Position numbers and translations under genes: made by a program | Notes under the pieces: model-generated | What the model was told of the DNA's origin: nothing | The model's input: the letters and a program-made list of their open reading frames with translations, nothing else | The model's database searches: none | Source of the DNA: Octopus bimaculoides | Lineage: Eukaryota | NCBI RefSeq assembly: GCF_001194135.2 | Contig: NC_068988.1 | Coordinates: 93,726,280-93,768,660, forward strand | Direction of reading: 5' to 3' | Length of the DNA stretch: 42,381 nucleotides | Shown here: in pieces, positions 2,793 through 39,164 of the stretch | How positions within the stretch are numbered: the stretch's first letter is position 1 | Layout of the letters: each line of letters starts with the position of its first letter

Positions 2793-3170
2793 NNNNNNNN
2801 NNNNNNNNNNNNNNNNNNNNNNNNNNNNNNNNNNNNNNNNNNNNNNNNNNNNNNNNNNNNNNNNNNNNNNNNNNNNNNNNNNNNNNNNNNNNNNNNNNNN
2901 NNNNNNNNNNNNNNNNNNNNNNNNNNNNNNNNNNNNNNNNNNNNNNNNNNNNNNNNNNNNNNNNNNNNNNNNNNNNNNNNNNNNNNNNNNNNNNNNNNNN
3001 NNNNNNNNNNNNNNNNNNNNNNNNNNNNNNNNNNNNNNNNNNNNNNNNNNNNNNNNNNNNNNNNNNNNNNNNNNNNNNNNNNNNNNNNNNNNNNNNNNNN
3101 NNNNNNNNNNNNNNNNNNNNNNNNNNNNNNNNNNNNNNNNNNNNNNNNNNNNNNNNNNNNNNNNNNNNNN

Positions 3171-8289: not shown

Positions 8290-8851
8290 TGATTGGTTTC
8301 AACTTTTGACACAGGGCCAACAATTTTGGTGGCGGGAGCTGGTCGATTACATCGACCCCAGTGTTCAACTGGTCCCTTATTTTATCGACGTCGAAAGGCC
8401 GAAAGTCGAAGTCGACCTCGGCGACATTTGAACACTGAATGGAAAGTCGGAAGAAATACCGCCAAGCATTTTGTCCGGCGCGGTAACGGACGATTCTTCA
8501 TTCTTTTCTACTCTAGGCACAAGGACCGAAATTTTGGGGGAGTGGGGGCCAGTCGATTAGATCGACCCAGTACGCAACTGGTACTTAATTTATCGACCCC
8601 GAAAGGATGAAAGGCAGAGTCTACCTCGGTGGAATTTGAACTCAGAACGTAGCGGCAGACGAAATACCGCCAAGCATTTTACCCGGCGTGCTAGCGTTTC
8701 TTTTTCTACTCTAGGTACAAGGCCCGAAATTTTGGGGGAGTGGCGGGGCCAGTCGATTAGATCGCTTCCAGTATGCAACTGGTACTTTATTTATCGATCC
8801 CGAAAGGATGAAAGCAAAGTCGACCTCGGCGGAATTTGAACTCAGAACGTA
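8290..8851 (-). mobile_element. Three head-to-tail copies of a tRNA-derived SINE (family B, Deu/Nin-domain-like)
   Basis: Unit of about 200 bp containing (reverse complement) gagttcaaattcc..gaggtcgactttgcctttcatcctttcggggtcgataaattaagtaccag; runs into an N gap. Confidence 0.8.
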
Positions 8852-9743
8852 NNNNNNNNNNNNNNNNNNNNNNNNNNNNNNNNNNNNNNNNNNNNNNNNN
8901 NNNNNNNNNNNNNNNNNNNNNNNNNNNNNNNNNNNNNNNNNNNNNNNNNNNNNNNNNNNNNNNNNNNNNNNNNNNNNNNNNNNNNNNNNNNNNNNNNNNN
9001 NNNNNNNNNNNNNNNNNNNNNNNNNNNNNNNNNNNNNNNNNNNNNNNNNNNNNNNNNNNNNNNNNNNNNNNNNNNNNNNNNNNNNNNNNNNNNNNNNNNN
9101 NNNNNNNNNNNNNNNNNNNNNNNNNNNNNNNNNNNNNNNNNNNNNNNNNNNNNNNNNNNNNNNNNNNNNNNNNNNNNNNNNNNNNNNNNNNNNNNNNNNN
9201 NNNNNNNNNNNNNNNNNNNNNNNNNNNNNNNNNNNNNNNNNNNNNNNNNNNNNNNNNNNNNNNNNNNNNNNNNNNNNNNNNNNNNNNNNNNNNNNNNNNN
9301 NNNNNNNNNNNNNNNNNNNNNNNNNNNNNNNNNNNNNNNNNNNNNNNNNNNNNNNNNNNNNNNNNNNNNNNNNNNNNNNNNNNNNNNNNNNNNNNNNNNN
9401 NNNNNNNNNNNNNNNNNNNNNNNNNNNNNNNNNNNNNNNNNNNNNNNNNNNNNNNNNNNNNNNNNNNNNNNNNNNNNNNNNNNNNNNNNNNNNNNNNNNN
9501 NNNNNNNNNNNNNNNNNNNNNNNNNNNNNNNNNNNNNNNNNNNNNNNNNNNNNNNNNNNNNNNNNNNNNNNNNNNNNNNNNNNNNNNNNNNNNNNNNNNN
9601 NNNNNNNNNNNNNNNNNNNNNNNNNNNNNNNNNNNNNNNNNNNNNNNNNNNNNNNNNNNNNNNNNNNNNNNNNNNNNNNNNNNNNNNNNNNNNNNNNNNN
9701 NNNNNNNNNNNNNNNNNNNNNNNNNNNNNNNNNNNNNNNNNNN

Positions 9744-10559: not shown

Positions 10560-10760
10560 GATTTCAAATTGTGACACAAGGCTAACAATTTCTGGGGCGG
10601 GTGGAGGTAAGTCGATTACATTGACCTCAGTGTTCAACTGGTACTTTATTTATCGACCCCGAAAGGATGAAAGGCAAAATCTACTTTAGCGGAATTTGAA
10701 CTCAAAACATGAAGACTTACTAAAGTGCCGCTAAGCATTTTTGCCCAGTGTGATAATCAT
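10560..10760 (-). mobile_element. Family B SINE copy
   Basis: Same core as 8290-8851; further copies near 8095-8250, 19250-19370, 25570-25710, 38945-39050 and 40690-40850. Confidence 0.75.
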
Positions 10761-11060: not shown

Positions 11061-11702
11061 TTAATGATCTGCGGTCCAAGTTCTATACGAAAAAGTTCTA
11101 CATGAAAGAGGAAAGTTAACCTTACTTAGAGTCTCACAGAAAAGTGTTGATTGTGGCACATTGTGAGGTATATGAAAACGATGGAACAGCATTGTCATAT
11201 AAGACGGTTTGCAAAACTTTCTTTCCAGTTGGGCCAAACAAATTTCTATAGTATTAACAACAGTTGAAGTTACGCAACACAGCACTAGTGTTTGCCATAG
11301 AGTGGAAGTTGGCGATATTACAGGATAAAGCAGAAGTTGGATGTACATTAAATACAAGGTTACAATGAATAGATTTTGAAAAAACAAACCATCGAGATGA
11401 AGCCGGTTAAATGCAATGACGACATATCCATAGAACGGTTGACAGAATGAACGATCGAACTGGTTGGCGACGGCGTCGCTCCAACTTACGCTTTCGGTAA
11501 CATCTTGTAACACTTTCTGTCGCGAACATACGTCTATAATGATTATTAGTAGAAGGCTTCCGAAACAAACAAAAGGTACCATTATAAAATAAACCTGCAG
11601 AATCTTTCGCAAATATTTTCGCCAAGTGGTGGACAATATTGAAGCGTAAGATAAAACTGAAGCAGTTTGAAAGAAAATTATTGCAACTAATAAGGTGTTC
11701 AT
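11061..11702 (-). CDS. Candidate gene: 213-aa multi-pass membrane protein of unknown family
   Basis: Long non-repetitive ORF in AT-rich DNA, caaaATG start context, 4-5 hydrophobic segments (about aa 3-23, 34-56, 105-129, 134-157); no TE motif recognised. Confidence 0.55.
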   Translation of the reverse strand: MNTLLVAIIFFQTASVLSYASILSTTWRKYLRKILQVYFIMVPFVCFGSLLLIIIIDVCSRQKVLQDVTESVSWSDAVANQFDRSFCQPFYGYVVIAFNRLHLDGLFFQNLFIVTLYLMYIQLLLYPVISPTSTLWQTLVLCCVTSTVVNTIEICLAQLERKFCKPSYMTMLFHRFHIPHNVPQSTLFCETLSKVNFPLSCRTFSYRTWTADH

Positions 11703-11924
11703 TTTGATTATAGTTTTATAGTTTTTATGACTTGCGTTTTCTCATCAACAGAAATTTGAATTTTCTATAAAACGCGAATAATGATAAAAGTATTTTAGGC
11801 CAAATAGAATCATAGCAGTACTATAGTGATGATACGGAGGTTAATTTGTTATGTAAGCAATGTGTTGTTTTATCACTCCCTTGCTTGTTTCAGTCATTGG
11901 ACTGTGGCCATGTGGGGGATGGAG

Positions 11925-15989: not shown

Positions 15990-16500
15990 TATACGTGATC
16001 TGATCAATAAGTATCTGGATTGTTACAATAGTAACGAAACTAAAGCACGCAGAATCTGCATCAAATTTTGCCAGAAGTTTGGCGATGCCTGCGCAAAGTT
16101 TTCATCGTTCTCGATACAACCAAGGAGATTTTGTACAACCAAAACCCGAGTGTCATTTTGGCCAGCTTAAAGCAGTTTTGGCACTAACACGCGTCTCACA
16201 CCCAAATCTTCAGTGACAACGGACTGACTGAACTGAACTCATCTGCACATCCTCTGATAACTCACGGATGATGATTCGACGATTTCCTCTCCCAGCTGCA
16301 CACATATCTCTGTTTTTCTCAGTTCTGTTGGCTGCGGGTCTCCCAGAAAATCGTCAATATCGACATTCTTTCGGCCATTTTGGAAACGTCTGAACCTCTC
16401 GTACACTTGTGTTCGACTCATATACTCCTCTTCATACACGTTCTGCAACACTGCGTAGGCCTCTGAGCAGGTATCGCCACAACTTTCTCTGTCATGGTCA
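15990..16500. mobile_element. Mariner relics (N-terminal HTH region on the minus strand; TIR-like start on the plus strand)
   Basis: AYAVLQNVYEEEYMSRTQVYERFRRFQNGRKNVD; tacgtgatctgatcaataagtatc followed by RICIKFCQKFG. Confidence 0.75.
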
Positions 16501-16833
16501 ATGCGACGATCACACGCTACACACCTTCCTTCTAAGCAATGCTGTAAACAGCGGAAGTGAGCTAGAACGTTAAAACTTTGTGCGCATGTACAGAAGAATC
16601 CATACGTAGTTACAATGTCAAGAAACAAAAATTTAAAAGAGAGATTCATGAAACTCAGGACTAACATTAAAGTAAAAGGCACATAAAATATTTATTCAAT
16701 CTAATAGAAATAAATAAAAACAAATATTGTCTGAAACTTTCTGTAGTAAATAAAGAGAGAAACAATGAAACCCAAGAGTGAAGGGTGACATTTCATTTGG
16801 GAAGAAGTTATGAAAGTTATAAACATACTGTGA

Positions 16834-19238: not shown

Positions 19239-20467
19239 TTATTTCAACTGTCTGCATGTTCTGAGTTCAAATTCCACTGAGGTCAACTTTGCCCTTCAAC
19301 CACTGGGGTTGATGTGGTCGACTAGTTCCCTCCCCCAAAATTTCAGGCCTTGTGCCTTTAGTAGAAAAGATTATTATTATTGTATTTTATAAAAGAGTGA
19401 CGTAACTCTTCAAGAAGGTAAATAGACAATAAGAAGAGCATGATGCGACTATAATAGATTGAGAATTGAATGGTTTGAGTGATATTTCGATAGCTTGTTT
19501 GTCTTTCTCAAGTTCAAATTGTAAAATGAAAACAACTGCAGAAACACAGAAATTAGAAATATAAATGAGGAAATCCTGTGTTCTTATTTTGATAGCATGA
19601 CATTACATCAGTTTTCAATTTTATAACTGGTAAAAGGAAAAAGAAAAAAAGAAAGAAGAGAAAATAAAAATTAAAAAATATTTAGTTGAACAGTTTTGTG
19701 TCAATGTGATGAAATTCACTTGTCATTTTATTCGTTCCTTCAGGGCGTGATGTCATTAATTCACAAATATATTTGTCCTCGTGCATTTTGAGGACTAAAA
19801 GTGTAGTAGTTTCAGAAAATTTTATGAGAATGTGCACTTTCAGGTGTTCCTCAAAATTGCAGCCACTCGTACATCGAAAGCCCTAAATAAGAGTATATAA
19901 ATATTGAGCTGTAAAATCCCTTTTAGGGAACTCATGTCTCCAGTATACATGACAGATGTTCTACCATTGCACCAAAGCAGCCATTTGAATTTCTTTATCC
20001 ATTTTAGAAACTTTATTCATATCAGTGAGAATTGGATGTTGTTGAAGTCATAAGAATTTATAAACTTTTGAGAGAACATGAAATGAAAACTGATTTTTTT
20101 TTGGAAATGCATCTCAAATTACATATAAAATCATAAATAACAACATGTAAAAAGATAAAATAGTATTGTTAACTTACTATCCAACCATAATGAAGGATGC
20201 ACTTTATCGAACTAGGAGTATAGTTACATTTCCAGCCTCTCTTTGTCATCTAAAACGCAAAGCAAAAACCAAATTAGAGTTATAACCTAATAACACCTAA
20301 AAGGTGAACAGAGTTCATTATTTACATTTGACAGATATTTGTCCTCATCTTGTTTGTTGTTAACACAACGTTTCAGCTGATATAGCCTCCAGCCTTCTTC
20401 AGGTGTCTTGGGGAAATTTCAAATCTGGGTTCTCATTCCTAAGGTATTTTTCGATGTTGTTGTTATT

Positions 20468-20526
<59 letters not shown>

Positions 20527-23500
20527 TGTTATTATTCAGATTACTGCTTGGAATCGAACTCAGAATCTTGGGGTTAGTAGCCTGCGCTCTTAACCACTAC
20601 GCCATATGCCCGTGGGGTCAATTCATTCAACAAAACTTCTTCAGGGTGGTGCCCCAGCATGGTCACAGTATAATGACTGACACAAGTAAAAGATACACGA
20701 TAAAAAAGTATCAGCCATATATATATTTACCTCTCCCCACACTTCCTCCCGTGGCAAGTGTATAAGGTCATCATGGACTACAACTTTGGAGTAGAGCTCC
20801 TTCAGCAAGCAGCAAATACCCCAGACATCAGCATTATTGAAATATTCATAATTAAATTGAAACTGTGAAAATAATAAATTAAAATAATCATAATTAAATC
20901 GAAACTGTAAAAATAATAAATTGAAATAATCATAATTAAATTGAAACTGTAAAAATAATAAACTTTTCCTCATTAGTAATAATATATAATATAAAGGCAG
21001 CGAGCTGACAGAAACATTAGCATGCTAGACGATTTCGTCTGTCTTTACGTTCTGAGTTCAAATTCCACCGGGGTCGACTTTACCTGTCATCCTTTCGAGG
21101 TCGATAAATTAAATACCAGTTGCGTACTGGGGTCGATCTAATCGACTGCCCCATTCCCCCACAATTTCGGGCCTTGTGCCTGGAGTAGAAAAGAATATAT
21201 AATTTTGTCTATTAAACATTGTAACGCTGTGTACGATGTAAGGGAGGTAACTCCCTATTAGTTGCCAAATAAAGTCGACCGTTGGTTGATTAACGTTCTT
21301 TGTAAAATATGTCTTCACATTGTTAATTATGGTTTAATCTATTCCGATCGATCTCTACGCAATTATGCACTTGGCTTTCCTTCAATGTCTGTGTGTGTTT
21401 GTTAGTGTGTTGACAATTAGTACAGTAATAAACCAAGCAGTTAGTGTTGGTTTGTTTACGTCCCCACAATTTAGTGGCAAAGCAAGAAAAAAAAAAGAAA
21501 GAAATCAAAACACATATACAAATGAATAAGTACTAGGCTTTAAAAAAATAAGTCCTTGGGTGGATTTGTTCAATTAAACCCTTCCAGAGAGTACTCCAGC
21601 ATGACCGTAGTCCGATGACTGAAACAAGCAGGTGATAGAAGATAAAAAATATGTACCTTTAATTTTTTTACCTGTTTCAATAATGATTGGACAGCAGGTA
21701 ACAGAATTGGAAATGAAATTCCAGATGTAGAACCAGAACCTGGAATCAAAGGGTCTTAAAGTTGGCCTGGCAAAGACCAAAGCTATGGCATTACTCATCA
21801 TTATCATCGTTTAACGTCTGCTTTCCATGCTGGCATGGGTTGGACGATTTGACTGAGGACTGGTGAACCAGGTGGCTACACCAGGCTCCAATCTGATTTG
21901 GCAGAGTTTCTACAGCTGGATGCCCTTCCTAACGCCAACCACTTCAAGAGTGTAGTGGGTACTTTTACGTGCCACCGGCACAAAGGCCAGTCAGGTGGTA
22001 CTGGCAACGGTCATGCTCAAAATGGTGTATTTTACGTGCTAGTTACTTAGAGATCTTGCCAGTGCTGGTGCCATGTAAAAAGCACCCAGTGCACTCAGTA
22101 AAGGACATCCAGCCATAGAAACCAAGCCAAAACTGACATTGTAACTAGGTGCTGACCTCTGAGGTTGTCAATTACTATCAAACCAGCCCACCCATGCCAG
22201 CATGGCGAAGGGAACATTAAATGATGATGATGATGATGTGTGTGTACATACACACACACACATATGTGTGTGTTTATATATTCTGAGGAAGGTTGAGCAA
22301 CTGCCATCTGTAGCCAGCAGGTATCCGCTACTGAAGATGGGAAAAGACCTAGAAACCATATCCTACTAGTCCTGATAAAGCTGGAGGGGAGTAGCTCGCT
22401 CCCTTTCTCACAATATACCAGACACAGGTTGTGTGTCATTAACCAGTTGTGCCTATTAATATTTTTTTAATATATTTATATATGTATTTAAGGGTCTTTG
22501 TGTTTGTCTCTCACTACTGCTTGACAACCAGTGTTGGTTTGTTTACATCACCATAACTTATCGGTTTGGCAAATAGGGACTGATAGAATAAGTACAAGAC
22601 TTAAAATAACTACTGGCGTAGATTTGTTCAAGGTGGTGCCCCAGCATGGTCGCTGTCCAATAACTGAAACAAGTAAACGATAAAAGATTTTAAATATTCT
22701 CAACAAAACAAAGAATACTTACTTCTGGGGGCAAAATTGTTGGGAATACAAGATTCTTTGTTGTTTCCACGTTCAGGTGTGAAGTGAGAGAAGCTCCCAA
22801 GTGAAAGTTCGTTAACTGTGGAATTCTTTTTTCATTCAATAATAAATTATTAGCTGAAAAACCACAAAGTTAAGCAGATCAGTTTCAGAATGACTGTAAT
22901 GATAAAAATCCCAAATACTATCTCCGCAACTAAATATATATGTAAAGGTAACACACTCAGTCGCATTAACAAAAGGATGTAGGTTCAATTCCCACATGGA
23001 TAGGAAAGCCTTCTTTTTCTGTCAAGGACTTATATGTCCCTTTATTAGACTATTTTCCTTAGTCGTTGCACAGTGATTGCTGTAAGCTATAAGCTAATAT
23101 AAAAATATTGGGTTGTCCAGAAAGTTTGTGCCGATTTTCCAAAAGGTTCTTCTCACTCAACACAGGCACCCCAGGCTAAAGAAGGTCTTCCCCCATTTAA
23201 GGTGCTGTTATCTGTTCGGTAGGATATGTATGAAAGGTTTAGTCCACTTAGAACTTTTAAACTTAAACCAAACGATAACAAAAGAGATCTACTGCGAGCA
23301 GCTTGTGCGGCTTGAGTCAGCGCTAGAAGAAAAACAACTGTCTTTGGTTTTAAGACAAAAGGTATTCTTCCATTAGGATAATGCTCGGCCACATACAGCG
23401 AGGATGACATTCCAAAGGCCGGAGCTGTTTGAATGGGAAACAATGCCTCACTCACCATATTCACTGGACATTGCCGCATCTGATTATCATTTGGATGGAA

Positions 23501-24112
23501 AAAACACGAATTCTGTAGACGAGGTCAGAACAGTACTAGAGGAGTATTGTTCCTCATGGTCAAGTGAATTTTGGGTGAGGGGCCTTGCAAATCTACCAGA
23601 TAGATGTAAGAGCATTGTAGAAAATGAAGGAGAGTATATTTTAGATTAAAAAAGAACTTTGTTTATCTTAATTTTGAAGTATAAAAAACCACATTATTTA
23701 TGGGATGACCCAGTATATGAGCAAAATAATTAAAATATGTTTGTGACATATTTCAATTGCTAAAAGGCAAATTCACTGCAGTTACAATGGTAAAAAGGTG
23801 TTTTTACACCTTTCTATCATAGAGAATTTTTTCTCCATAGTAACTGCAGTAAATTTGTCTTTTAGTACTTGAAATATGTCACTAACATATTTTAACTAAC
23901 CTAAAGATTTTTGCTTCTGCCTAAACTCTGCTNNNNNNNNNNNNNNNNNNNNNNNNNNNNNNNNNNNNNNNNNNNNNNNNNNNNNNNNNNNNNNNNNNNN
24001 NNNNNNNNNNNNNNNNNNNNNNNNNNNNNNNNNNNNNNNNNNNNNNNNNNNNNNNNNNNNNNNNNNNNNNNNNNNNNNNNNNNNNNNNNNNCACACACGC
24101 ACGCACACAAAT

Positions 24113-24143
<31 letters not shown>

Positions 24144-27100
24144 TCTATTGTGTATATGCTAGCTATGAAACTTCTGCAATGGCTACCAGATTCAAATAAT
24201 TGAATGTACAAATTAAATTAAATTCAAAGACTTACATGTCCAAGCTAGAAATAAGATTCCATTTTCATTGAGGTATTTTGCAGCTTCGATTAACATTAAA
24301 ATTATGTCTTTTATTTCGTCAGCATGTAAAGAATTAAGTTTTCTGTGTAATGGTTCTGCAATAGGAATATAACATGAATATACAAATAAACAATGATCTT
24401 CATATTTAAACATAAGACACACACATGCTGAAGATCTTAAATAAGTTAACAAGCTTTGAGGTAACTGCCACCATGGGAAGACAGCACTTATTTTATCACC
24501 ACCGCAACACACACACACACACACACACACAATGGTGGGAGACGCAAAATACAGTTGACATGTTGCTAAGATGAGAAGAGAAAATATAGAGAAGATGATG
24601 TGTGATACATACCACAATAGAACTTGGAACAAAAATAAAGTTCGTTTCTGTTTAGGATAATCCAATTAATTGGGATAATGTATTGATACTGGAGGGAACC
24701 AATCTTCTTTAGAATAGTGAAACATTCGCTCAAGTAATTCTGTTGATGCTGAACATTCTGGCACTGGAATAACAAATGACATTGGCAAATATATAGATAC
24801 ATGCGTGTGCATATAAGTGAATGTGTAGGGTGATAGAGAGATAAAGAGATTTTACAAATTTTCACTTTCTGTTCTCTCTTTTACCTTTTCCCTTTCTCTC
24901 TCCCTCTCTGGTCGTATTTATTTGGTTTGAAGGTGTGGTATTGTTAGGATTTCCTTTGTTAAAATGCTTTGTCTGCCATTTTATGTGACATGAGAGGTGG
25001 TTGATTATTTGCATAAAGAGGAATAAGGCATATATATTCGGAAATTCAACATTGATTGTAGAATTTATTAGGACACTGATGAAGTGAACGTATAACTGCA
25101 TAATGTTTCTACCATGATTATGTAATTATTTCAGCATTTTACTGAAACATGTGTGTGTCCTACAAAGCTTTGAATGCCACATCTGTTTTCTGCTTATTAT
25201 TTTATATATATATATGCGTATGTGTGTGTGTGAGTGCGTGCATGTAGAATCTTTACAGTAGTAACTAGAAGGAATAGACTTACTTTAGTTACTATGACAT
25301 ATTTTTTATTCAGATGCATCAGGTTACTCACTCCACAGATTGGCAACTCTTTTAACTTCACTTTTGTACAATTCTTAACATCGTTTGCGGACTCAAATTC
25401 ACAAGTGTTCGAAAACTGAAACAAGCAAGGTAATAAATAATAATAGTAATAATAATAATAATAACAATAATAATAATGATAATGATAATAACAACAATGG
25501 CATTCTTCTTTTTTTTGCTTTTATATACCTTCTGGAGGAGTTACCTTAATCCTATAAAATATTAATAATAATAATCCTTTCTATTATAGGCATAAGGCCT
25601 GAAATTTGTGGGAAGGTGACAATTCATTATATCGACCCCAGTGTTTCACTGGTACTTAATTTATTGACTCTGAAAGGATGAAAGGCAAAGTTGACCTTAG
25701 CGGAATTTGAACTCAGATTGTGAAGTACCAGGCAGTGGGCCTCACAAAGGCAATGACGAAAGACTGAGACCTCTGGAGATGTGCTGTGACTGCGAAGACC
25801 CGGCAAAGAAAGTGAGTTCACGGCTGTATCCTACACCAGTTTCGCATAACCAGCCCCAGCCCACTCAAAAGTATCTTGGATCCTAGGGCAACCTGCTGTG
25901 CTTGAGGATACCTATTGAGTGAAGTACATCAAAATCAAATGGAAATTGTAGTTGTGATCCCCGTGCCAGTGGCACGTAAAAAGCACCATCCGAAAGTGGC
26001 CGATGCCAGTGCCGCCTTGACAGGCCCCTGTGCCGGTGGCACGTAAAAAGCACCCACTACACTCTCGGAGTGGTTGGCGTTAGGAAGGGCATCCAGCTGT
26101 AGAAACATTGCCAGATCAGACTGGAGCCTGGTGCATCCTCCTGGCTTCCCAGACCCCAGTCGAACCGTCCAACCCATGCCAGCATGGAAAACGGACGTTA
26201 AACGACGATAATGATGATGATGAGTCACCTTTTACTGAACTTCCCAGCATGCAACTTGTCTATTTTAAAATGAAATTCATAGACTGTTGTCACAGACTCA
26301 TCTCAATTAATGAAAAAACTAAATTTTCTTCTTTACCTTAAAGAACTGAGTTGTGTTATCACATTGCACAAATTCTTCAGCTGAATAGATGCATTCCATT
26401 AACTCTTCTTGACTTTGCTTTAATCTGAATAAAGAACAAAAACATGTAAATTGTAGATTTGTTTCATCTTATCATCATCATCATCATCATCATCATCATT
26501 TAATGTCCGCTTTCCATGCTAGCATGGGTTGGACGATTTGACTGAGGACTGGTGAAACCAGATGGCTACACCAGGCTCCAGTCTGATCTGGCAGAGTTTC
26601 TACAGCTGGATGCCCTTCCTAACGCCAACCACTCCGAGAGTGTAGTGGGTGCTTTTACGTGCCACCGGCATGAGGGCCTGTCACGCAGTACTGGCAACAG
26701 CCACGCTCAAAATGGTGTTTTTCACATGGAATTTGTTGAGACAGATTTTCTACAGTAAAGTTTGTTTGTCAACGTAACATGGCAATCCTGGTTTAGAACG
26801 AATATTCCTGTAATTTAGCCCCAGGAGACATCGTCTCCATCTGGCTATACGACACGATCTGTGTCCTTATATTTTTTAAACAAGGGAACCTAGTACCCCC
26901 ACCCAGCTTAAAACAATATCTCTGTATTGCGATTTCCGGGTTCTTTTCCCTCATCAGCACAGAATATAACCAGCTGGAGACGATGTCTGCTGGGGCTAAA
27001 CTACAGCAACATTCATCCTAAACCAGGACGGCCATGTTATGTTGGCAAACAATCTTTACTACAAAGTACTGTTGCTGAATATCTCTCGTGAGATTTACAA

Positions 27101-29038
27101 ATAGTCATTTTCTGTTCATCTTTTATATTTTACTTGATTCTGTCATTAGACTGTGGCCAAATCTACTCATAAGGTTTTGGTCGGCCCCAAGGCTATAGTA
27201 TAAGACACTATGCACAATATGCCACATGGTGGGCCTAATCCCTAAACCATGTGGTTGGGAAGCAAGTTTCTTACCACACAATATATATTATCATTATTAT
27301 TATTATCATTATCATAATTATCATTATCATAATTATCATTATTATTATTATCATTATTATCATTAATATTTGGCAAAAGGGAAGCAAGCTGACAGAATCG
27401 TTGGGCAAAATGCTCAGCGGTATTTCGTCCGTCTTCACATTCTGAGCTCAAATTCCATCGAGGCTGACTTTGCCTTTCATCATTCCGGGGGATCGAGAAA
27501 ATACCAGCTGAACACTGGGGTCGATATAACTGACTTATCCGCCTCCCGCAAATTTCGGGCCTTGTGCCTCTACTAGAAAGAATTAACATTTGGCAGAAGT
27601 AGCAGAGGGATTTTCGGGCTGAGAGTTTTTTGCATCAGCACTTCCCAAAAATAAACTTCCATACTCCCCTCTTTGCTGTGCCCCACCCCGTGTTGGATGC
27701 CAGCTTGCATCTAACTGTTCACCACATCACCCTAACACATAGATTGTGTTTAGCAACCAACTGGTTCCAAGTCAACAATGGAATGTCAACAACAGTCTTA
27801 TCAACATGCTGCACAAAATACCTTTGATCTCACATCTCTCTCTCTTTCACTCACTCTCTCTTTCACTCACTCACTCATGCACTCGCTCTCCCTCTGTCTA
27901 ATTCTTGCAATGAGCATCTGTCAATGATTGTTATTTTTGTCTGCTCCCAGAGGTCAACAAGAATTCAGTGTTATAAACAAACACTTCCCCACCTTTCTCT
28001 CTCTCTCTCCCTCTCAGAGGCTGAGGTAACACAAGTTTGGAACCTTTGTTCTCAAGATAATAATATAAATGACGTACCTTCTTGAGAACTGTGTACAACC
28101 AGTAGCTTTACAAGCAATTTCTTTGCATTTAAGACAGTGTTCTAACAGGACACTAAGTGTATGGCTGTCCTCAAGACCAAGATGTCTGTTCTGGATATTC
28201 TCCTGTAAAGTTTTCACGTATTTTTTGCCCTGTAAATTGATGAAATAGCACAAAAAAGCGTTCTGCTATTAGTAAAAACTAGGAATTTGAAGAACTTCAT
28301 AAAGAGGAAGCAACAAAATCAATAAACAAAAATAAATGTATGGCAAGCGTGCTGGTGGCACATAAACGCACCCCGGAGTCATGTAAATGGCACCCATGCC
28401 AGTGGTACGTGAAAGCACCCGTTGCACTCTCAGAGTGGTTGGCATTAGGAAGAGCATCCGACCATGCCAACCACTCTGAGAATGTAGTGGGTGCTTTTAC
28501 GTGCCACCGGCATGAGGGCCAGTCAGGCAGTACTGGCAACGGCCACGCTCAAAATGGTGTATTTTACGTGCCACCTGCACAGGAGCCAGTCCAGGGGCAC
28601 TGGCAACAAACTCACTTCGGATTTAAAACACTGGATGATGATGATGATGATGAGTAGTGTATGTATGTGTATGTTTATATTCGTGTGTATAGGCGAATGT
28701 GTGTGTGTAACTATCACTTTCATATTTGTAAGAGATTACATGGAAGAGTTGAGTGCATGTATGTATGTATATACAGCTCCCCCTCCTCTCCAACTGTACA
28801 CCACATCACAATCCACGCATTGTGTGTTTAACAACCAACTGGTTCAAGTCAACAACAGCATGTCAAGTGCAGTCTTAACATGCTGGGAAAACTGCCTTTA
28901 ACTCTCTCTCTTTCTCACTCACCCTCCCTCTATCTAATTCCTGTAATGTGTATGTGTCAGTGATTGTTATTTTTGTTTGGACACATCACTCCACCTTTCC
29001 TCCCTGACATCAACAATTCAGCCAATCCAGTGTTATAA

Positions 29039-29119
<81 letters not shown>

Positions 29120-32000
29120 AACACCAGTACAAGTATTTGGTGATCTTTCCACTTATTCAGCCGCTAACCTCTCAATTGTTATTTCATCTGTTTTTCCAGG
29201 TTAGAATGAGTCAAACAAAACTTGTTGACGCAGATTCTCTACAGCCAAAATGCTCCACAGTGTCGCACCTTGGGCAAGGGTCTTCCACTGAAATATTTTC
29301 CAGACATGTTTCCACAAAATATTACAAATGAACGACACGACACTAATTACTGCAGTAGGACATAGACACTCATTAACAATTATCATGTGACATTCAAGAC
29401 AAGGACACACAGACACACACAACATACAGGAGAAACAAAATGGAATTCACGGAAAATGGAATTTATGGAATTCACCATGATCCTTTTGAGCCATCATGCA
29501 CCAGTACCTAGCAGGTGTGATGCTGTGCGAAGACTTGAGATGCATCTCCTTGAGTAACTTTTCATAAAGTTACCTTGTTTTTACTCGCTGTTTCGCTAGT
29601 TTCTGTAACAATGCATTTTGGAGACAGTACGCTGCAATTACCAAAAATGTATTTCTATAGAAATAAGTGAAATAGAGAATTAAAAAAATGAGATGTTTTT
29701 CAAAAGCCACCTGAGGAGATGCATTGACACCTACAATGCATCACAACTATTTATACAGTATCTCACCCGCAAGGTATCAGTGTATGATGAACCAAAACGA
29801 TTGTAGTGGTTCTGAATAACAAGTCACATGAACTCCATTTTCTTTCCCTCATATATTTTATAAACTCTATGGATATGAAAAGATTCCTGAAGGAAATCCA
29901 GTGGCACATACCTCCAAACTGTTGTTGACATCAGGTAGCCAAATACTCTGGAAACAATAGCTGTATACCCAAATATAAAATTACTACATATATATCATAT
30001 ATATATATAAGACAAGTGAGATGTTGTAAGGTCGTATCAGTTTAGCAATAAACAATGAAGCAGTCACAAAACAAACAGTAAGGCTTAATACTTACTTCAA
30101 TACAATCTTCATCGGAACACGCATCGAACTGGCAGAGAAAAGCTTTGTTTAATTTGTTTCTGAAAACCTCGTAACTTGAGATGGATTTGTTCTATAAAAG
30201 AGATTACACAGTTAGAGATTACAGAGAGGGAGAGAGAGAGAGCATGCAAAAGGTGTGTGTGTGTGTGCGTGAGTGTGTGTGTGTGTGAGTGTGTGTGTGT
30301 GCATAGGCATGGTTAGAGGTCTAGGTTGTTGCAATATCTTGTTCTATATCTTGATGGCAAATTTGAAGTCTTTGGCACTACATAGTGGCACCCTGTTCTA
30401 GTTTTATTTTAACTCTCGATGCCAAGGTTTGGGACAAGTCCCTTTAGGATCTCCCAGTTGTATATTATGTCATATCTTTCTCGCCTACGCTCTAAGGAAT
30501 AGAGTTTTAATCGCTTGAGTCTATCCCAGTAGCTTATCTGCTGCATAGAGGATATCTTCTTTGTGTAGCTTTGTTGGATTGCCTCAAGTTCTGCAATTAA
30601 TTTGACACTGGTTGGTGACCATAGCTGAGAGCAATAGTCAAAGCGGCTTAGGACTAGTGTCCTCCAGAGGACCATCATGGTTCCCTGATTTCTCTCTTTA
30701 AATGTTCTAAGAATCCATCCAGTCAGCCGCCTGCATTTCATTGCCAATTTAGCAACATGCACATGGAAGGATGCATCATTACTCATGTAAATGCCCAGGT
30801 CTCGCACTGACTGAGTCTCTGGGATTGCAATCCCTCCAGGTCCTGTGTATTTAATTGGTATTGCATTTAGTTTTGCATGCTGATAGCACAAAGCTTGAAA
30901 CTTTTCAGCATTAAACTGCATGCTATTCTTCTCAGCCCATTTGTATATTTCATCCAACTCACGTTGCAGGTGCATAGCATCTTCAGGGTTCTGTATCACC
31001 TGTGAGACTTTTGTATCATCTGCATAACTTGTGACAATGGCCTTCTGTGTGGCTGAGGGCATATCTGAGAGGGCCATTATGAACAGTAGTGGTTCCAAAA
31101 CAGTGCCTTGTGGAACATCGCTCATTATTTGTGTGTCATTGGTTACTACCACCTGATTTCTATCCTTCAGAAAGTCATGTAGCCATTCTCCCAAACTATA
31201 CCGAGATCATGTAGCTTGGGACATATCATTCCATGATTGACTATATCGAAGACCTTCGCAAAGTCGAGATATATCACATCTACATATGAGTGGTTGAGCA
31301 GCTGTTTCAGCACCCAGTCATAGTGTTATAAGAGCCGAATGAGGCAGCTTCTTCTTTGTTGTCGATGAATGGTTGAATGACCAAATCCAAGCTCCTCTGC
31401 TAGTTCCTCAACAGTTACGATGGGATTTTGTTCCACCAGGGTTTGCAGGATGTTCTTGTCGAGCCCCACAGATCATCCAGGATGAGGCTCATCTAGGCTG
31501 TAGTTTCTGGCTTGAAATATATACACACATATATACACATATATATATACATACACACATATATATATATACACACACACATATATATACACACATATAT
31601 ACACATATATATATATACACATATATATATATATATACACATATATATATATACACATATATATATACACACATACATATATATACACACATATATACAC
31701 ACATATATATATATACACATACACACACACATATTTATTTGAAAAAATGATTAGAGATGGCTTTTGGGGGCGTAATTTTTATTTTAATGATATAATGTTC
31801 ACAGCTTCTCTAATGAGTTTTGACCTTTTCGATGGCTGTTTTAAAACTGGAATTCTTTGGTTTAGAAGTTGTTTAAAGAATTTCAATACTGAATTTTGAC
31901 AAAAATGATTACAAATGTATAAAACTTACCATTTCTACACTGCCCAACTGAATAAAATCTGTAAAATAAATGAAATCTTATTTAGTCAAGAAACAATAAT

Positions 32001-32066: not shown

Positions 32067-34754
32067 NNNNNNNNNNNNNNNNNNNNNNNNNNNNNNNNNN
32101 NNNNNNNNNNNNNNNNNNNNNNNNNNNNNNNNNNNNNNNNNNNNNNNNNNNNNNNNNNNNNNNNNNNNNNNNNNNNNNNNNNNNNNNNNNNNNNNNNNNN
32201 NNNNNNNNNNNNNNNNNNNNNNNNNNNNNNNNNNNNNNNNNNNNNNNNNNNNNNNNNNNNNNNNNNNNNNNNNNNNNNNNNNNNNNNNNNNNNNNNNNNN
32301 NNNNNNNNNNNNNNNNNNNNNNNNNNNNNNNNNNNNNNNNNNNNNNNNNNNNNNNNNNNNNNNNNNNNNNNNNNNNNNNNNNNNNNNNNNNNNNNNNNNN
32401 NNNNNNNNNNNNNNNNNNNNNNNNNNNNNNNNNNNNNNNNNNNNNNNNNNNNNNNNNNNNNNNNNNNNNNNNNNNNNNNNNNNNNNNNNNNNNNNNNNNN
32501 NNNNNNNNNNNNNNNNNNNNNNNNNNNNNNNNNNNNNNNNNNNNNNNNNNNNNNNNNNNNNNNNNNNNNNNNNNNNNNNNNNNNNNNNNNNNNNNNNNNN
32601 NNNNNNNNNNNNNNNNNNNNNNNNNNNNNNNNNNNNNNNNNNNNNNNNNNNNNNNNNNNNNNNNNNNNNNNNNNNNNNNNNNNNNNNNNNNNNNNNNNNN
32701 NNNNNNNNNNNNNNNNNNNNNNNNNNNNNNNNNNNNNNNNNNNNNNNNNNNNNNNNNNNNNNNNNNNNNNNNNNNNNNNNNNNNNNNNNNNNNNNNNNNN
32801 NNNNNNNNNNNNNNNNNNNNNNNNNNNNNNNNNNNNNNNNNNNNNNNNNNNNNNNNNNNNNNNNNNNNNNNNNNNNNNNNNNNNNNNNNNNNNNNNNNNN
32901 NNNNNNNNNNNNNNNNNNNNNNNNNNNNNNNNNNNNNNNNNNNNNNNNNNNNNNNNNNNNNNNNNNNNNNNNNNNNNNNNNNNNNNNNNNNNNNNNNNNN
33001 TTTATAACGTTGACCACTAAGGGATGGGATAAACGACCTGCTTATTCTTAGTGCAAGGTTTGAAGAGTGCAGTTCGATTTTCAGTTATTTTTTCAAAGCT
33101 ATAATGGAAGTGACAAAGGAGTATATTTAGCATATTTTGCTTTATGAATTCAATAAAGGCAATAATGCAATGGAAAATGTGAGGAATATTAATGCAATAT
33201 ATGGGGATCGGACAATAAGTGTAAACCAATGGCAACGGTGGTTCCAGAAATTCCAAGCCAGAAACTACAGCCTAGAAGATGAGCCTCGTCCTGGATGATT
33301 TGTAGGGCTCGACAAGAACATCCTGCAAACCCTGGTGGAACAAAATCCCATCGCAACTGTTGAGGAAAAATTTTGAAACCATACAGATGGTTTAATAGAA
33401 AAATTTGAAATGAAGGCAGCTTATGTTATTGTAACGACATATCAGGACTCATAAGAGCTTGGCTTAAATTACGACCCTAGTGAGTGGAGGCTATCCATAA
33501 ACACTTCGGTTTATAATACTAAAGCTGTGCTACTGCACACAGGTAATAAAGTTCTGTCAATTCTTGTAGCTCTTTCTGTTGTCCGAAAGGAAACGTACAA
33601 AAGTTTATCATTCATATTAGGTTGTATAAGATATAATGAGCAGAAATAGTTGATTTGTGCATACTTGAAAATCTTAGCAATTGAAGTGGCTTACAGGCTG
33701 GATTTACTAAGTACATGTGCTTTTTGTGTCTGTGGGATGGCCGTACTCAGGAAGAGCATAATATCCGTAGTGAATGGTCATTGAGAAATGAGTCAGAAAT
33801 TAGTTCACATAATGTTATACGTGAACCATTGCATATTAAATTAGGCCTTATCGAACAGTTTATTAAGAAGTTAAATCTAGAAGAGCTACCATTTTTGTAC
33901 TTGAAAACTAAGTTTTTCCCAAACTAAGTTTTTCCCAAACTAAGTTTTTTTCCAAACTAAGCCATGTGAAAATCAAAGAAGGGGGATTTGTTGGTCCCCA
34001 AATTCGGCAACTTTTGACAGAAGATAATTTTGAAAACACCTTAAATGTATTGGAACTGGATGCATGGCAAAGTTACAGAAATGTATGGAATGGTCTATTT
34101 GGGAAGTCCAGAGCAGTCAACTATGAAGTACTTTTACAAGAGTTAATTGATTCATACAAATCATTAGGGTGTAATATGTCATTAAAAGTTCATTATTTCC
34201 AATCGCATCTAGCATTAGTTCTTCAGAATGCAGCAGACGTCAGCAATGAACATGGTGAGAGATTCCACCAAGACATAAGTCAAATGGAAACTCGATATAA
34301 GGGGATGTGGAGTCCTGCCATGCTTGTTGACTTTTGATATTTTCTTCAGAGAGATAGACCTGATGCTATACATAGAAAGAAACATAAACATTGTACTAAA
34401 AAATAGATGTTCTTCTTTTAACAAAAGATGCAGATAACGTATTCATTATCAATAACAACCCATTTTGCAGAAAACTCACTTTAGTTCTAGGAAAAAAATG
34501 TTATTTTCACAGAAAATGGCTCACTTTCTAGCAAAAACACATCATTTAGTGACGGCCCATTTTATGAAACACTGGAATCATTTCATGAAAAATGGAGTTC
34601 ATTTTGGTTATCTTTGGTAAAAACTGTTCCAGAAAATGATGTTCTCTTCTCTGTAGCAAAATGATTGTTGTACAATGTTATTAATTATAAATTTATGAAT
34701 TTGCCTTTTGGGCTTTAATGCTTGCTGGCCACCTATATTATTGTTGTTTTTATT

Positions 34755-34795: not shown

Positions 34796-37700
34796 TCTTT
34801 ATATATATATATTATATCATTATCATCATCCTTTAACATCTGTTTTCTATGCTGGCATGGGATGGACGGTTTGACCAGAGCTGCTTTCAGAACAACCTCC
34901 ACCACTGCTAACTCGGTCACCTAAGTAACAGAAACTGTCTACTAAATCTAAGAATCCCTCTGGACATTCAAAGTTGTCTATTTTCTGTACATTCCTGGAG
35001 TTTAACCCTTTCATTATTTCGAGATGCTCTGTGTTTCTTTCAATTACTTTAAATATAACAAAGAATTTAGTAAAAGAACTTAGTTATCATTCAGCTAGTG
35101 TCAGGAACATAAATTGGGACTAAGGTTTGGTGGAAGATTTTAATTCAAAACTTATGAAAACAAGATATTTGTACTCAGAGCCAGTTTCAGCCGGTTTGGT
35201 CACGAAAGGGTTAATGTATCTGTGCATCAGCCACATATAAAGTCTACTTTCTCTGTTGACTTTCCATTGATACTGTTGCACCTCTTGTGTGTTCATAGCT
35301 TGTACTAAGTACACCATATGAAATTTCTACTGAGACCTTTTATACATATCGAGCAGGGCCATTTCCCTGAAGGAATCTATGACTTGTCTGTTTTCCTACT
35401 TATTAGGGACTTTGATCTTTGCTAAATTATTTCTAAATCCTTTTGATTCCAGATCTTGCTTCCATACATGAAATTTCTTCTCTACTTCTGGTAGTGATTC
35501 AGCAATAAGAACAAGGTCATTGGCATAGAGGAGTTCCCAAGGACAGTCTTAGATTCCTCTGTTATAGCCTGGAGACTATGATAAAGCAAAGGGGGCTGAG
35601 AACTGATTGGTGGTGGACTCCTACTTGTACCCTAAATACCTTGCTATACTCATTGGTGACCTTCACCTTTCTGACAGCATTTCTGTTCATGGCTTTCACA
35701 GCTTTCAACAACCACTAATCTATCCTTAGATTCCACAATGCCCATATTAATCATGATTAGCTCCATACAGATTTTTAGTCTTATCTTCATTCTGATTGTT
35801 AATCTTACCTTCATACAGGTTATTAGTCTTATCAGAAAATATGAATTTATATTTTGAACTTTTAAAATTTCTAATATCAGAACAAAATCTGAAAGTCAAC
35901 GTAAGTAATAAGATAACGAATGTCTCCCCCCCACCCCCCACCGCTATAAAAATGCCCTAACAGTGGCTTCAGATGTAAGATATATTATTAATTTTATTTC
36001 CTAATATAATAATAAGCAAAGTGTTTTTATAAATTTGTATATATAAATATTTATCCAGAATCATGAGAATGGATGAGGATAGCTGCCTGAAAAAGTGCCA
36101 CACCCTAACAGTTGAGGGAACCCGTGGAAGAGGTAGGCCCAGGAAGACCTGGGCTGAGGTGGTGAGGCAAGATCTTCGTACATTGGGCCTCACCGAGGCG
36201 ATNNNNNNNNNNNNNNNNNNNNNNNNNNNNNNNNNNNNNNNNNNNNNNNNNNNNNNNNNNNNNNNNNNNNNNNNNNNNNNNNNNNNNNNNNNNNNNNNNN
36301 NNNNNNNNNNNNNNNNNNNNNNNNNNNNNNNNNNNNNNNNNNNNNNNNNNNNNNNNNNNNNNNNNNNNNNNNNNNNNNNNNNNNNNNNNNNNNNNNNNNN
36401 NNNNNNNNNNNNNNNNNNNNNNNNNNNNNNNNNNNNNNNNNNNNNNNNNNNNNNNNNNNNNNNNNNNNNNNNNNNNNNNNNNNNNNNNNNNNNNNNNNNN
36501 NNNNNNNNNNNNNNNNNNNNNNNNNNNNNNNNNNNNNNNNNNNNNNCGTTGCCAGTATCGCCTGACTGGCCTTCGTGCAGGTGACACGTAAAAGCACCTA
36601 CTACACTCTCTGAGTGGTTGGCGTTAGGAAGGGCATCCAGCTGTAGAAACTCTGCCAAATTTAGATTGGAGCCTGGTGTTGCCATCCGGTTTCACCAGTC
36701 CTCAGTCAAATCGTCCAACCCATGCTAGCATGGAAAGCGGACGTTAAACGATGATGATGTTGATGATGAATCACACCGGACGCAGAGGAGGAGAGAAAAT
36801 AGTAATTCAGAGAAGGAGAAGTAGTGAGAGTAATAGCCCTGACTGAGAGGGAGTGAGAGAAAGAAAGCAGTAGCAATGAGAGAAAGGAAGGGGTGGTAGA
36901 TGAATAAGGAAGTAAGGGGTGAAAAAAAAATCAATGTTTCAACTCTGTGTGAGTATATGTGTGCATGTGTGTGCGTGTACAAGGGAAGTATGTGTATGTT
37001 TGTGTGTGTGATTATTATGTACCATATTTTGAACCTTATTTATATATAAAATACAATTAGCCATCATTAGTGACAGCACATGGTCATCTAGTTATTAATA
37101 ATATACTTGTATATTTATTTATAACTTATTCACTTAGTTTCTTTATGTATGTGCCTCAGGCCATCAAACGAACAAGCAAGCATGGCTGAGGGGCATATGT
37201 TTAAATTTGACTTATCTAGCAGCAAGCTTAACCAAAGATGGGAGAAGAATCTATAATTCAAAGCCCGAAATCGGTTTTAAGCTATCTGCCATTTCCTCTG
37301 TGACCTTTGCAAAGGTAGGAGCCTAATTTTTATTCCTTGCTCGATTTATCACCATGCTTCATCATAAACTGAGCTCTTTCTAGCTTCTAAGGTCTCTTGA
37401 CTCCTATGCATATATACATATTCTTTTACTTGTTTTATTCTTTGACTGTGGCCATGCTGGATCACCGCCTTTAGTCGAACAAATCAACAGCAGGACTTAT
37501 TCATTGTACGCCCAGTACTTATTCTATAAAAAGCACCATCCAAACATGGCCGTTGCCAGTCTCCTCTGGCCTCTGTGCCGGTGGCATGTAAAAAGCACCC
37601 ACTACACTCACGGAGTGGTTGGCACTAGGAAGGGCATCTAGCTGTAGAAACATTGCCAGATCAGACTGGAGCCTGGTGCAGCCTCCTGGCTTCCCAGACC

Positions 37701-38601: not shown

Positions 38602-39164
38602 CTGAAAAGGAAAATGAAATTGTGTTAAAGGAAATAAAATATACATATTCTGAATACTACTTGCAACAGAATTTTAAACAAAAAGAAAACATAATTTACA
38701 TTATTTACATTTGACAGATATTTGATGGATATTTGTCCTCATCTTGTTTGTTGTTAACCTTAATCAAACTGTGCTGTATTTGGGTCCTTTTTCGCATTAT
38801 ATAACAGAATATGGCACAGTCTGACAAAGGTAAGCAAACAGACACTTTGAAGTTACTTTCAACTCATTACCACATAAAAAGTTAATAAACAGGAACTCAA
38901 CTAAAACCTATCGATTACTCTTTCATTGGGATGCTAAATTGTTTTCCTTTCAGGGTCAATAAATTAAGTACCAGTTGCATACTGAGGTCGATCTAATTAG
39001 CTGTCCCTCTCCTCAAAAATTTCGGGCTTTGTGTCTAGAGTAGAAAAGACTGTTTTTATGCAACTTGGCATAAGAATGAGCATTAATCTACATCATCATC
39101 GATTAACATCCATTTTCCATGATGGCATGGATTGGACAACATACATACATACACACCTACATTC

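What the first reader, a model, noticed from the sequence alone, without database searches (positions are those of the whole stretch)
20837..20962. Splice acceptor triplicated in frame: a 42-bp repeat that could add 0, 14 or 28 aa next to the activation segment
Seen: three 42-bp units, each with polypyrimidine tract + CAG + the first about 25 nt of exon M. They give acceptors at 20946, 20904 and 20862, all phase 0 and stop-free ([14 protein letters not shown] / [14 protein letters not shown] / [14 protein letters not shown]). Established: in canonical kinases such as PKA, APE is followed by 11 residues before the alphaF Asp, and only the proximal acceptor gives this spacing ([15 protein letters not shown]). 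Seen: a branch-point-like CTAAT lies about 30 nt upstream of the distal acceptor. Inference: either tandem alternative acceptors produce three length isoforms with an aromatic, Asn-rich insert, or intron sequence is being exonised by duplication, possibly as a copy-number polymorphism.
Basis: partly seen in the sequence, partly recalled or inferred. Interest (0 to 1): 0.78.

Follow-up and report, generated by a model that had tools for sequence, protein, structure and literature searches.

The report
Triplicated splice acceptor in kinase-like gene
A 42-base stretch covering the end of an intron and the first nine codons of an exon of a degenerate kinase-like gene is copied three times in a row, giving three look-alike in-frame splice acceptors. 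The structure is real, but it is a known kind of tandem duplication and no data at hand show that more than one acceptor is used.

Summary
Window 20836-20961 (minus strand) holds three head-to-tail 42-bp units, 90-95% identical. Each unit is 15 nt of intron (TTATTATTTTTACAG) plus the first 27 nt of an exon.

The exon belongs to a spliced kinase-like gene. Four consecutive exons (J-M) have GT-AG borders and matching phases, and score 41.6 bits against Pfam Pkinase. The catalytic motifs are lost: HRDLK is FLAWT, DFG is NFH, APE is PPE.

Only the exon-proximal acceptor (20862) gives the normal APE-to-alphaF spacing. Adding 14 or 28 aa lowers the Pfam score by 11-12 bits.

All three acceptors look usable, each with a branch-point-like motif, a pyrimidine tract and a clean AG-free zone. 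The sequence cannot say which is used, and no transcript, orthologue or annotated protein could be found.

"In frame and stop-free" is expected about one time in five for such a duplication, and tandem repeats cover about 8% of this window.

The closest precedents are the human F7 intron 7 minisatellite (donor side) and a SETD5 acceptor duplication.

I read it as a near-neutral minisatellite whose proximal copy stays the main acceptor. It is a new member of a known kind, of modest interest.

The parts
20920..20961 (-). Repeat unit A (distal): TTATTATTTTTACAG + TTTCAATTTAATTATGATTATTTCAAT. It equals the consensus. Its AG is at 20948-20947, so the first exon base would be 20946.
20878..20919 (-). 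Repeat unit B (middle): 2 substitutions against A (CAA>CGA, Q>R; TTC>TTT, silent). Its AG is at 20906-20905, so the first exon base would be 20904.
20836..20877 (-). Repeat unit C (proximal): 2 substitutions against A (T>C in the pyrimidine tract; GAT>GAA, D>E). Its AG is at 20864-20863 and the first exon base is 20862. It continues into the unique part of exon M.
20972..20978 (-). TACTAAT, the best branch-point-like motif. Its branch A (20973) lies 26 nt before the G of the distal AG. It sits in the A/T-rich tail of the upstream SINE.
20935..20941 (-). ATTTAAT (fits yTnAy) inside unit A. Its branch A (20936) lies 31 nt before the middle AG.
20893..20899 (-). ATTTAAT inside unit B. Its branch A (20894) lies 31 nt before the proximal AG. 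A second motif, TTTTAAT at 16 nt, was created by the C>T change in unit B.
20731..20862 (-). Exon M with the proximal acceptor, 132 nt, phase 0-0: [44 protein letters not shown] (alphaEF-alphaF region). The donor is GTAAAT at 20730.
22723..22853 (-). Exon L: (S)[43 protein letters not shown]. It covers the end of the catalytic loop, NFH in place of DFG, and PPE in place of APE. The donor is GTAAGT.
24236..24355 (-). Exon K: (E)[44 protein letters not shown] stands in place of HRDLK. The donor is GTAAGT.
24613..24763 (-). Exon J: [50 protein letters not shown] (alphaC to beta5). The donor is GTATGT. Adding it raises the Pkinase score from 36.0 to 41.6 bits.
20993..21208 (-). SINE copy in the intron just upstream of the acceptor array, 76-90% identical to 8 other copies in the window.

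Best explanation
This is a three-copy, 42-bp minisatellite made by tandem duplication, by slippage or unequal exchange, across the intron/exon-M boundary of a degenerate CDK-like kinase-domain gene.

The duplicated block carried a pyrimidine tract, CAG and the first nine codons. These codons are AT-rich and include a TTAAT that can serve as a branch point for the next copy. Each copy is therefore a self-contained acceptor module, and all three are in frame.

Most likely (inferred, not shown) the exon-proximal acceptor at 20862 remains the main 3' splice site. It would use the TTAAT 31 nt upstream in unit B. It is closest to the purine-rich, enhancer-like sequences and the donor of exon M, and it gives the only product with normal APE-to-alphaF spacing.

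The two upstream copies would then be intronic pseudo-acceptors. They are silent or used at a low level, giving in-frame +14 or +28 aa products. The array would be near-neutral rather than an evolved isoform switch.
For: Shown:
- The repeat and its anatomy.
- The exon is part of a spliced kinase-like gene with consistent phases and GT-AG borders. Pfam Pkinase scores 41.6 bits against a cut-off of 31.7.
- The proximal isoform is the only one with canonical spacing. The score falls to 30.9 (+14 aa) and 29.7 bits (+28 aa, where the alignment stops before the insert). The CDK7 alignment needs only one 1-residue gap. The +28 form finds no PDB chain at E<=0.001.
- Pyrimidine content at -3..-22 is 0.70 for the middle and proximal acceptors, like exons J, K and L (0.65-0.70). 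It is 0.50 for the distal one.
- The middle and proximal acceptors each have a yTnAy motif at 31 nt and a 42-nt AG-free zone.
- There is no RNA structure that would mask or loop out a copy (z=0.09).
- The copies have diverged by 2-4 substitutions without indels, so the array is not brand new and is tolerated.

Precedents:
- A 31-bp SETD5 duplication of an acceptor leaves the downstream native acceptor in use, by RNA-seq (PMC9912651).
- The repeated 5' sites of the F7 intron 7 minisatellite stay silent (PMC1557585).
Against: - No RNA evidence of any kind is available.
- The best branch-point match, TACTAAT, lies 26 nt upstream of the distal AG. Under the scanning rule the first AG more than about 12-15 nt downstream of the branch point used becomes the 3' splice site (PMC1431707; PMC9284458). 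That rule would favour the distal acceptor.
- Positions -16 to -1 (and the first 27 exon bases) are the same in all three copies apart from four single-base differences, so their intrinsic strengths are close.
- The argument from protein fit assumes the gene is under selection. That is doubtful, because the catalytic motifs are gone, the beta1-beta3 and alphaG-alphaI exons were not found, and no related protein was found.
Confidence: 0.45

Rival explanations
1. The distal acceptor (20946) is the main site. U2 pairs with the near-consensus TACTAAT in the SINE tail, and the first usable AG downstream is the distal CAG. The mature protein would then carry a 28-aa aromatic, Asn-rich insert ([28 protein letters not shown]) between PPE and alphaF. 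On this view a tandem duplication across an acceptor is expressed, unlike one across a donor.
For: TACTAAT has its branch A 26 nt from the distal AG. The two AGs in between lie only 4 and 10 nt from the branch A, close enough to be bypassed. The scanning and AG-exclusion-zone rule comes from PMC1431707 and PMC9284458. The internal motifs (ATTTAAT) match the U2 pairing consensus less well (sequence).
Against: The distal acceptor has the poorest extended pyrimidine tract (0.50 against 0.70). It also lies furthest from the GC- and purine-rich part of exon M. The +28 product loses 12 bits against Pkinase and all PDB matches. In the SETD5 precedent the downstream copy won.
Confidence: 0.2
2. Two or three acceptors are used at appreciable levels, possibly regulated or varying with copy number, giving 0/+14/+28-aa isoforms of the loop next to the activation segment.
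For: All three modules are complete and nearly identical, in frame and stop-free. No substitution has destroyed an AG or a pyrimidine tract.
Against: The in-frame, open property has about a 0.2 chance expectation. With only 6 substitutions there is no power to show constraint. The inserts are hydrophobic copies of intron plus exon sequence in a structurally tight region (inference). No transcript or orthologue supports them.
Confidence: 0.15
3. The locus is a decaying or unexpressed kinase-derived gene, so the acceptor array has no consequence and simply reflects the high tandem-repeat and TE turnover of this region. This overlaps with the best explanation.
For: - HRDLK, DFG and APE are all altered.
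- No Gly-loop/VAIK exon and no alphaG-alphaI exon were detectable in the window.
- Exons A, J-K and L-M find no protein among 5.8 billion clusters. That collection holds at least one O. bimaculoides RefSeq/EukProt protein.
- SINEs sit within 20-45 nt of three donors and of this acceptor.
- About 8% of the window is tandem repeat.
Against: Four consecutive exons (178 codons) keep open frames, matching phases and good GT-AG consensus. Together they pass the Pfam gathering score. Missing exons may lie in the six N gaps or be too diverged to detect. Pseudokinases with all three motifs lost can still be functional (general knowledge).
Confidence: 0.3
4. The triplication is an assembly artefact.
For: This is a draft assembly with six N gaps in 42 kb.
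Against: The three copies differ from one another at 2-4 positions and have no indels. No gap is adjacent. The whole array is 126 bp, which is within the length of a single read.
Confidence: 0.03

Closest known systems
Human F7 intron 7 37-bp VNTR minisatellite (Borensztajn et al. 2006, PMC1557585)
   Same: A minisatellite with one unit spanning an exon-intron boundary, so that the real splice site is followed by identical pseudo-sites. It is a natural model for how the spliceosome chooses among tandem identical sites.
   Different: F7 involves the 5' splice site, and there 5'-to-3' scanning picks the exon-adjacent, native site. Here the 3' splice site is repeated. Scanning from an upstream branch point would pick the copy farthest from the exon, so the outcome is not predictable by analogy. 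Copy-number polymorphism and silence of the pseudo-sites are shown for F7 and untested here.
SETD5 c.568-31_568dup, a 31-bp duplication of an acceptor (SpliceAI-visual paper, PMC9912651)
   Same: A short tandem duplication across an intron-exon border gives competing nearby acceptors.
   Different: It has two copies, the upstream one is out of frame, and RNA-seq showed that only the downstream native site is used. It is a rare human variant. The array here has three diverged copies, all in frame, and each brings 27 nt of exon.
Tandem alternative acceptors (NAGNAG and longer in-frame tandem 3' splice sites; e.g. PMC3250501)
   Same: These are in-frame alternative 3' splice sites that add or remove whole codons.
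   Different: NAGNAG sites are 3 nt apart, share one branch point and pyrimidine tract, and have documented usage. Here the spacing is 42 nt, each site has its own tract and branch-point candidate, and usage is unknown.
AG-exclusion-zone rule and AG-creating acceptor variants (PMC1431707, PMC9284458)
   Same: An AG placed between a branch point and the native acceptor tends to capture splicing. This is the rule that would favour the distal copy.
   Different: Those cases are single AGs created in an existing tract. Here each extra AG arrives with a full copy of the acceptor module, including a possible branch point for the next copy.
CDK7 and other CMGC protein kinases; pseudokinases in general
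   Same: The best PDB matches are CDK7 (E 2e-7), CTK1, CDK12/13, CDK9 and p38. The Pkinase score is above the gathering cut-off. [12 protein letters not shown] and DVW..C.L.EL align with the catalytic-loop end, subdomain VII and alphaF.
   Different: The catalytic Asp and Lys of HRDLK, the DFG Asp and the APE Ala are all replaced. No Gly-loop/VAIK exon was found. No orthologue is detectable, so it cannot be called a CDK7 family member.

Membership tests
Protein kinase domain (Pfam PF00069) | Profile score above the curated gathering cut-off | tested here: met
   Spliced exons J-M with the proximal acceptor score 41.6 bits against a cut-off of 31.7, E 1.3e-10, covering profile positions 43-195 of 263.
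Protein kinase domain (Pfam PF00069) | Catalytic residues of an active kinase: HRD Asp, catalytic-loop Lys/Asn, DFG Asp | tested here: not met
   FLAWTSNN stands in place of HRDLKxxN, and NFH in place of DFG. The Asn of the loop is kept. The sequence is kinase-like, and catalytically dead if expressed.
Protein kinase domain (Pfam PF00069) | Complete domain: Gly-rich loop, VAIK Lys, alphaG-alphaI | tested here: inconclusive
   No such exon was found by a home-made kinase HMM or by motif scans on six-frame fragments. The window has six N gaps and short exons score poorly.
Minisatellite spanning a splice junction (F7 IVS7 type) | Tandem units longer than 10 bp, one of which straddles the exon-intron boundary, each carrying the splice-site consensus | tested here: met
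   Three 42-bp units, each with a pyrimidine tract plus CAG. Unit C runs into the unique exon.
Minisatellite spanning a splice junction (F7 IVS7 type) | Copy-number polymorphism among individuals | not testable with these tools
   Only one assembly is available. No second genome of the species or of a relative could be reached.
Minisatellite spanning a splice junction (F7 IVS7 type) | Pseudo-sites silent, one site used | not testable with these tools
   No transcript data. Protein and contig look-ups found nothing.
Tandem alternative 3' splice sites | Two or more AGs demonstrably used in mRNA | not testable with these tools
   No RNA-seq or EST access.
Tandem alternative 3' splice sites | Alternative sites separated by a multiple of 3 with no stop codon in between | tested here: met
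   Exon lengths are 132, 174 and 216 nt and all are open. The chance expectation is about 0.2.
Transposable-element exonisation | The added exon sequence derives from a TE | tested here: not met
   The unit occurs nowhere else in the window. The upstream SINE ends at about 20993, outside the repeat.

The most novel reading that the evidence does not exclude
The array is a copy-number-variable acceptor minisatellite. Its copies are all used, so splice-site choice and repeat number together set the length (0, 14, 28 ... aa) of the loop between the activation segment and alphaF of a lineage-specific pseudokinase. That would be a protein-length polymorphism encoded by a repeat at an intron-exon junction.
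Probability: 0.1. Interest if true: 0.6.

Novelty: new member of a known kind. Interest (0 to 1): 0.3.

Why it matters
If transcripts could be examined, the locus would be a clean natural test of how a 3' splice site is chosen. Three near-identical acceptor modules sit 42 nt apart. The best branch point lies next to the distal copy, while the enhancer-rich exon body lies next to the proximal copy. It is the acceptor-side mirror of the F7 donor minisatellite. It would also show whether a duplication across an acceptor is buffered or becomes an in-frame protein insert. As it stands it is a structural curiosity in an unannotated, catalytically dead kinase-like gene in repeat-rich DNA.

Tried and rejected
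- **Homologue searches.** Exons L+M, the putative exon A and exons J-M found no related protein. So there is no orthologue for comparing copy number and no annotated splice choice.
- **Exact look-up of the 110-aa ORF that contains the array.** Not on record.
- **Spliced peptides in the representative-library search.** By the same stated rule, structure prediction of the isoforms was not possible. The single job was instead spent on the RT fragment to learn whether octopus proteins are in the collection; at least one is.
- **Search for the remaining kinase exons.** I tried tblastn with CDK7 written from memory (a lead only), a home-made six-kinase HMM and motif scans. Only J, K, L and M were found. 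An earlier longer version of exon K ([11 protein letters not shown]...) was dropped once exon J with a matching phase was found.
- **RNA folding of the array.** No structure beyond shuffles.
- **TE origin of the unit.** Rejected.
- **tRNA scan for the SINEs.** Nothing.
- **Literature on HEXB-type acceptor duplications.** Not retrievable in the library.

Full report

Yes. On the minus strand, window 20961-20836 consists of three head-to-tail 42-bp units. TRF gives period 42, 3.0 copies, 92% matches, no indels and score 226. A search with the unit allowing 3 mismatches finds these three copies and no others in 42 kb, with none in 100 shuffles. The repeat finder agrees.

Unit A (distal, 20961-20920) equals the consensus. 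Unit B (20919-20878) has CAA>CGA and TTC>TTT. Unit C (20877-20836) has a T>C change in the pyrimidine tract and GAT>GAA. A-B and A-C differ at 2 sites, and B-C at 4.

Each unit is TTATTATTTT(T/C)ACAG followed by 27 nt that read FQFNY(D/E)YFN. The AGs place candidate first exon bases at 20946, 20904 and 20862.

**2. What is the exon?**

Exon M (20862-20731, donor GTAAAT) follows exon L (22853-22723, donor GTAAGT), exon K (24355-24236, donor GTAAGT) and exon J (24763-24613, donor GTATGT). The phases fit: J ends with 1 nt and K starts with 2; K ends with 1 nt and L starts with 2; L/M is phase 0.

Joined, J-M score 41.6 bits (E 1.3e-10) against Pfam Pkinase, whose cut-off is 31.7. They cover profile positions 43-195. 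The best solved relatives are CDK7 (E 2e-7), CTK1, CDK12/13, CDK9 and p38.

The catalytic motifs are gone. [14 protein letters not shown] stands where GIIHRDLKxNNLLL is expected. NFH replaces DFG and PPE replaces APE. No exon for the Gly-rich loop/VAIK or for alphaG-alphaI could be found. The window does have six N gaps.

Three searches of a 5.8-billion-cluster protein collection, with exons L+M, a putative first exon at 38519-38207, and J-M, found nothing. That collection holds at least one Octopus bimaculoides RefSeq/EukProt protein: a jockey-like reverse transcriptase, XP_014783059.1, which is 57% identical to the RT fragment in this window. This hit shows that octopus entries are present, not that the proteome is complete, and I did not establish which species the window comes from. 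Within that limit, no protein related to this locus is on record. The locus is a spliced, kinase-derived, catalytically dead sequence that is either an unannotated pseudokinase gene or a gene in decay.

**3. The spacing argument**

With the proximal acceptor the protein reads [15 protein letters not shown], which is 11 residues between the APE-equivalent Glu and the alphaF Asp. HMMER aligns this to CDK7 APE-LLFGARMYGVGV-D with a single one-residue gap. PKA has 11 residues, E208 to D220 (my knowledge).

Adding one repeat (+14 aa) lowers the Pkinase score from 41.6 to 30.9 bits. Adding two (+28 aa) gives 29.7 bits, and the alignment then stops at profile position 157, before the insert (the same trend appears). 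The +28 form finds no PDB chain at E<=0.001.

**4. Can each acceptor work?**

Positions -16 to -1 and the first 27 exon bases are the same in the three copies apart from four single-base differences: the T/C at -5 in the tract, and three substitutions in the exon part.

- **Distal acceptor.** It has the best branch-point match, TACTAAT at 20978-20972, with the branch A 26 nt from the AG. The two AGs in between are only 4 and 10 nt from the branch A, and AGs that close are normally bypassed. Upstream of -16 the sequence is purine-rich, so the pyrimidine fraction at -3..-22 is 0.50.
- **Middle and proximal acceptors.** Both have a pyrimidine fraction of 0.70, like exons J, K and L (0.65-0.70). 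Each has an ATTTAAT (yTnAy) 31 nt upstream, supplied by the exon-derived part of the preceding unit, and an AG-free zone of exactly 42 nt.
- **Extra motif.** The C>T change in unit B adds a second TTTTAAT 16 nt before the proximal AG.
- **RNA structure.** The RNA shows no structure beyond shuffled controls (z = 0.09).

All three modules are plausible, and sequence alone cannot decide among them.

**5. Which one is likely used?**

Two established principles pull in opposite directions. The scanning and AG-exclusion-zone rule says the first AG more than about 12-15 nt downstream of the branch point used becomes the 3' splice site (PMC1431707; PMC9284458). If TACTAAT is the branch point, that AG is the distal copy.

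Against this, the proximal copy has its own branch-point candidate and a better extended tract. It lies next to the GC- and purine-rich body of exon M and its donor, where exon-definition contacts form (inference from general splicing knowledge).

In the one documented human case I could retrieve, a 31-bp duplication of the SETD5 exon 8 acceptor, the downstream native site was used exclusively by RNA-seq (PMC9912651). The donor-side analogue is the 37-bp F7 intron 7 minisatellite. Its functional pseudo-sites stay silent because selection proceeds 5' to 3' from the exon (PMC1557585).

The copies here have accumulated 2-4 substitutions without indels, so the array has been tolerated for some time. 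I therefore favour the proximal acceptor as the main site, with the upstream copies silent or minor (0.45). The alternatives are distal-dominant (0.2) and real multi-isoform use (0.15). The possibility that the gene is not functional at all (0.3) overlaps with these.

**6. Is the arrangement more than chance?**

The repeat itself certainly is. Its suggestive properties are not.

- A duplicated block has a 1/3 chance of being a multiple of 3.
- The only new codons are the five read from the 15-nt intron tail. These are open with probability 0.73 from composition, or 0.64 empirically (166 of 259 AG-ending 15-mers nearby). Together this gives about 0.2.
- By my sum of the rows, tandem repeats at TRF score 60 or more cover about 3.3 kb of the 39.3 kb of non-N sequence, about 8%. 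One of the eight junctions of exons J-M falling inside some repeat is therefore not unlikely if such events are neutral.
- The repeated 27 exon bases are 11% G+C, intron-like. By my count the rest of exon M is roughly 50% G+C (sequence). This fits slippage in AT-rich low-complexity DNA.

**7. Origin**

The unit is not a transposable element. A SINE copy (21208-20993) lies immediately upstream, and its A/T tail supplies TACTAAT. The junctions show only a single shared T, which is consistent with replication slippage or unequal exchange (sequence).

An assembly artefact is unlikely. The copies are distinguishable, no gap is adjacent, and the array is only 126 bp.

**8. Comparison and verdict**

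This is an acceptor-side member of a known class: tandem duplications or minisatellites that span a splice junction and multiply the splice-site consensus. It differs from NAGNAG-type tandem acceptors in spacing and in having separate tracts and branch-point candidates. It differs from the F7 case in the side of the intron involved, which makes the outcome less predictable.

It is real and neatly built. But no evidence shows use of more than one site, the host gene is of doubtful function, and the striking in-frame property is expected fairly often. Interest is modest (0.3). RNA-seq junction counts would settle it at once.

Noticed in passing
window 38080-38206, 22590-22722 and 20600-20730 (minus strand): The same SINE family (…ATCTTTTATC…TTTACTTGTTTCAGTCATTGGACTGTGACCATGCTGGGGCACCACC…) begins 20-36 nt downstream of the GT donors of putative exon A, exon L and exon M, always in the sense orientation (alignment A1, 71% mean identity). 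This could be chance in a SINE-rich genome, or an insertion preference for the A/T-rich start of introns.
   Followed up: partly
window 20993-21208 (minus); also 8329-8851, 10610-10716, 19241-19383, 25564-25717, 27376-27583, 38945-39049: A second SINE family (…GGCAGTCGATTAGATCGACCCCAGTA…GAATTTGAACTCAGAACGTAAAG…) has nine copies in the window, 76-90% identical. They include a 208-bp-period tandem array at 8329-8851. ARAGORN sees no tRNA in them.
   Followed up: partly
window 24236-24355 and 22723-22853 (minus): The kinase-like gene has lost HRDLK (now FLAWT), DFG (now NFH) and APE (now PPE), yet keeps open exons, matching phases and good splice consensus. It has no detectable relative in the protein collections searched.
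   Followed up: partly
window 38207-38519 (minus): An open 104-codon stretch starts with ATG and ends at a GTAAGT donor ([25 protein letters not shown]…). It may be the first coding exon of the same gene. It has no Pfam hit and no homologue.
   Followed up: partly
window 30412-31206 (minus); 16242-16691 (minus): There are transposon remnants inside the gene's span: a reverse-transcriptase fragment (RVT_1, 39.9 bits; 65% identical to an unnamed 984-aa ENA protein and 57% to an Octopus bimaculoides jockey-like RT) and a Mos1-type HTH_48 fragment.
   Followed up: yes
window 2793-3170, 3975-4333, 8852-9743, 23933-24091, 32067-33000, 36203-36546: Six runs of N mark assembly gaps, often flanked by microsatellites. 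One lies in the K-L intron. Missing kinase exons could be hidden in them.
   Followed up: no
window 11064-11741 (minus): A 226-codon open frame, hydrophobic and with membrane-like segments, has no Pfam match. It was not examined further.
   Followed up: no
window 20468-20526: A perfect (ATC)x19.7 microsatellite lies in the intron about 200 nt downstream of exon M. It is one of 36 tandem-repeat arrays in the window.
   Followed up: no
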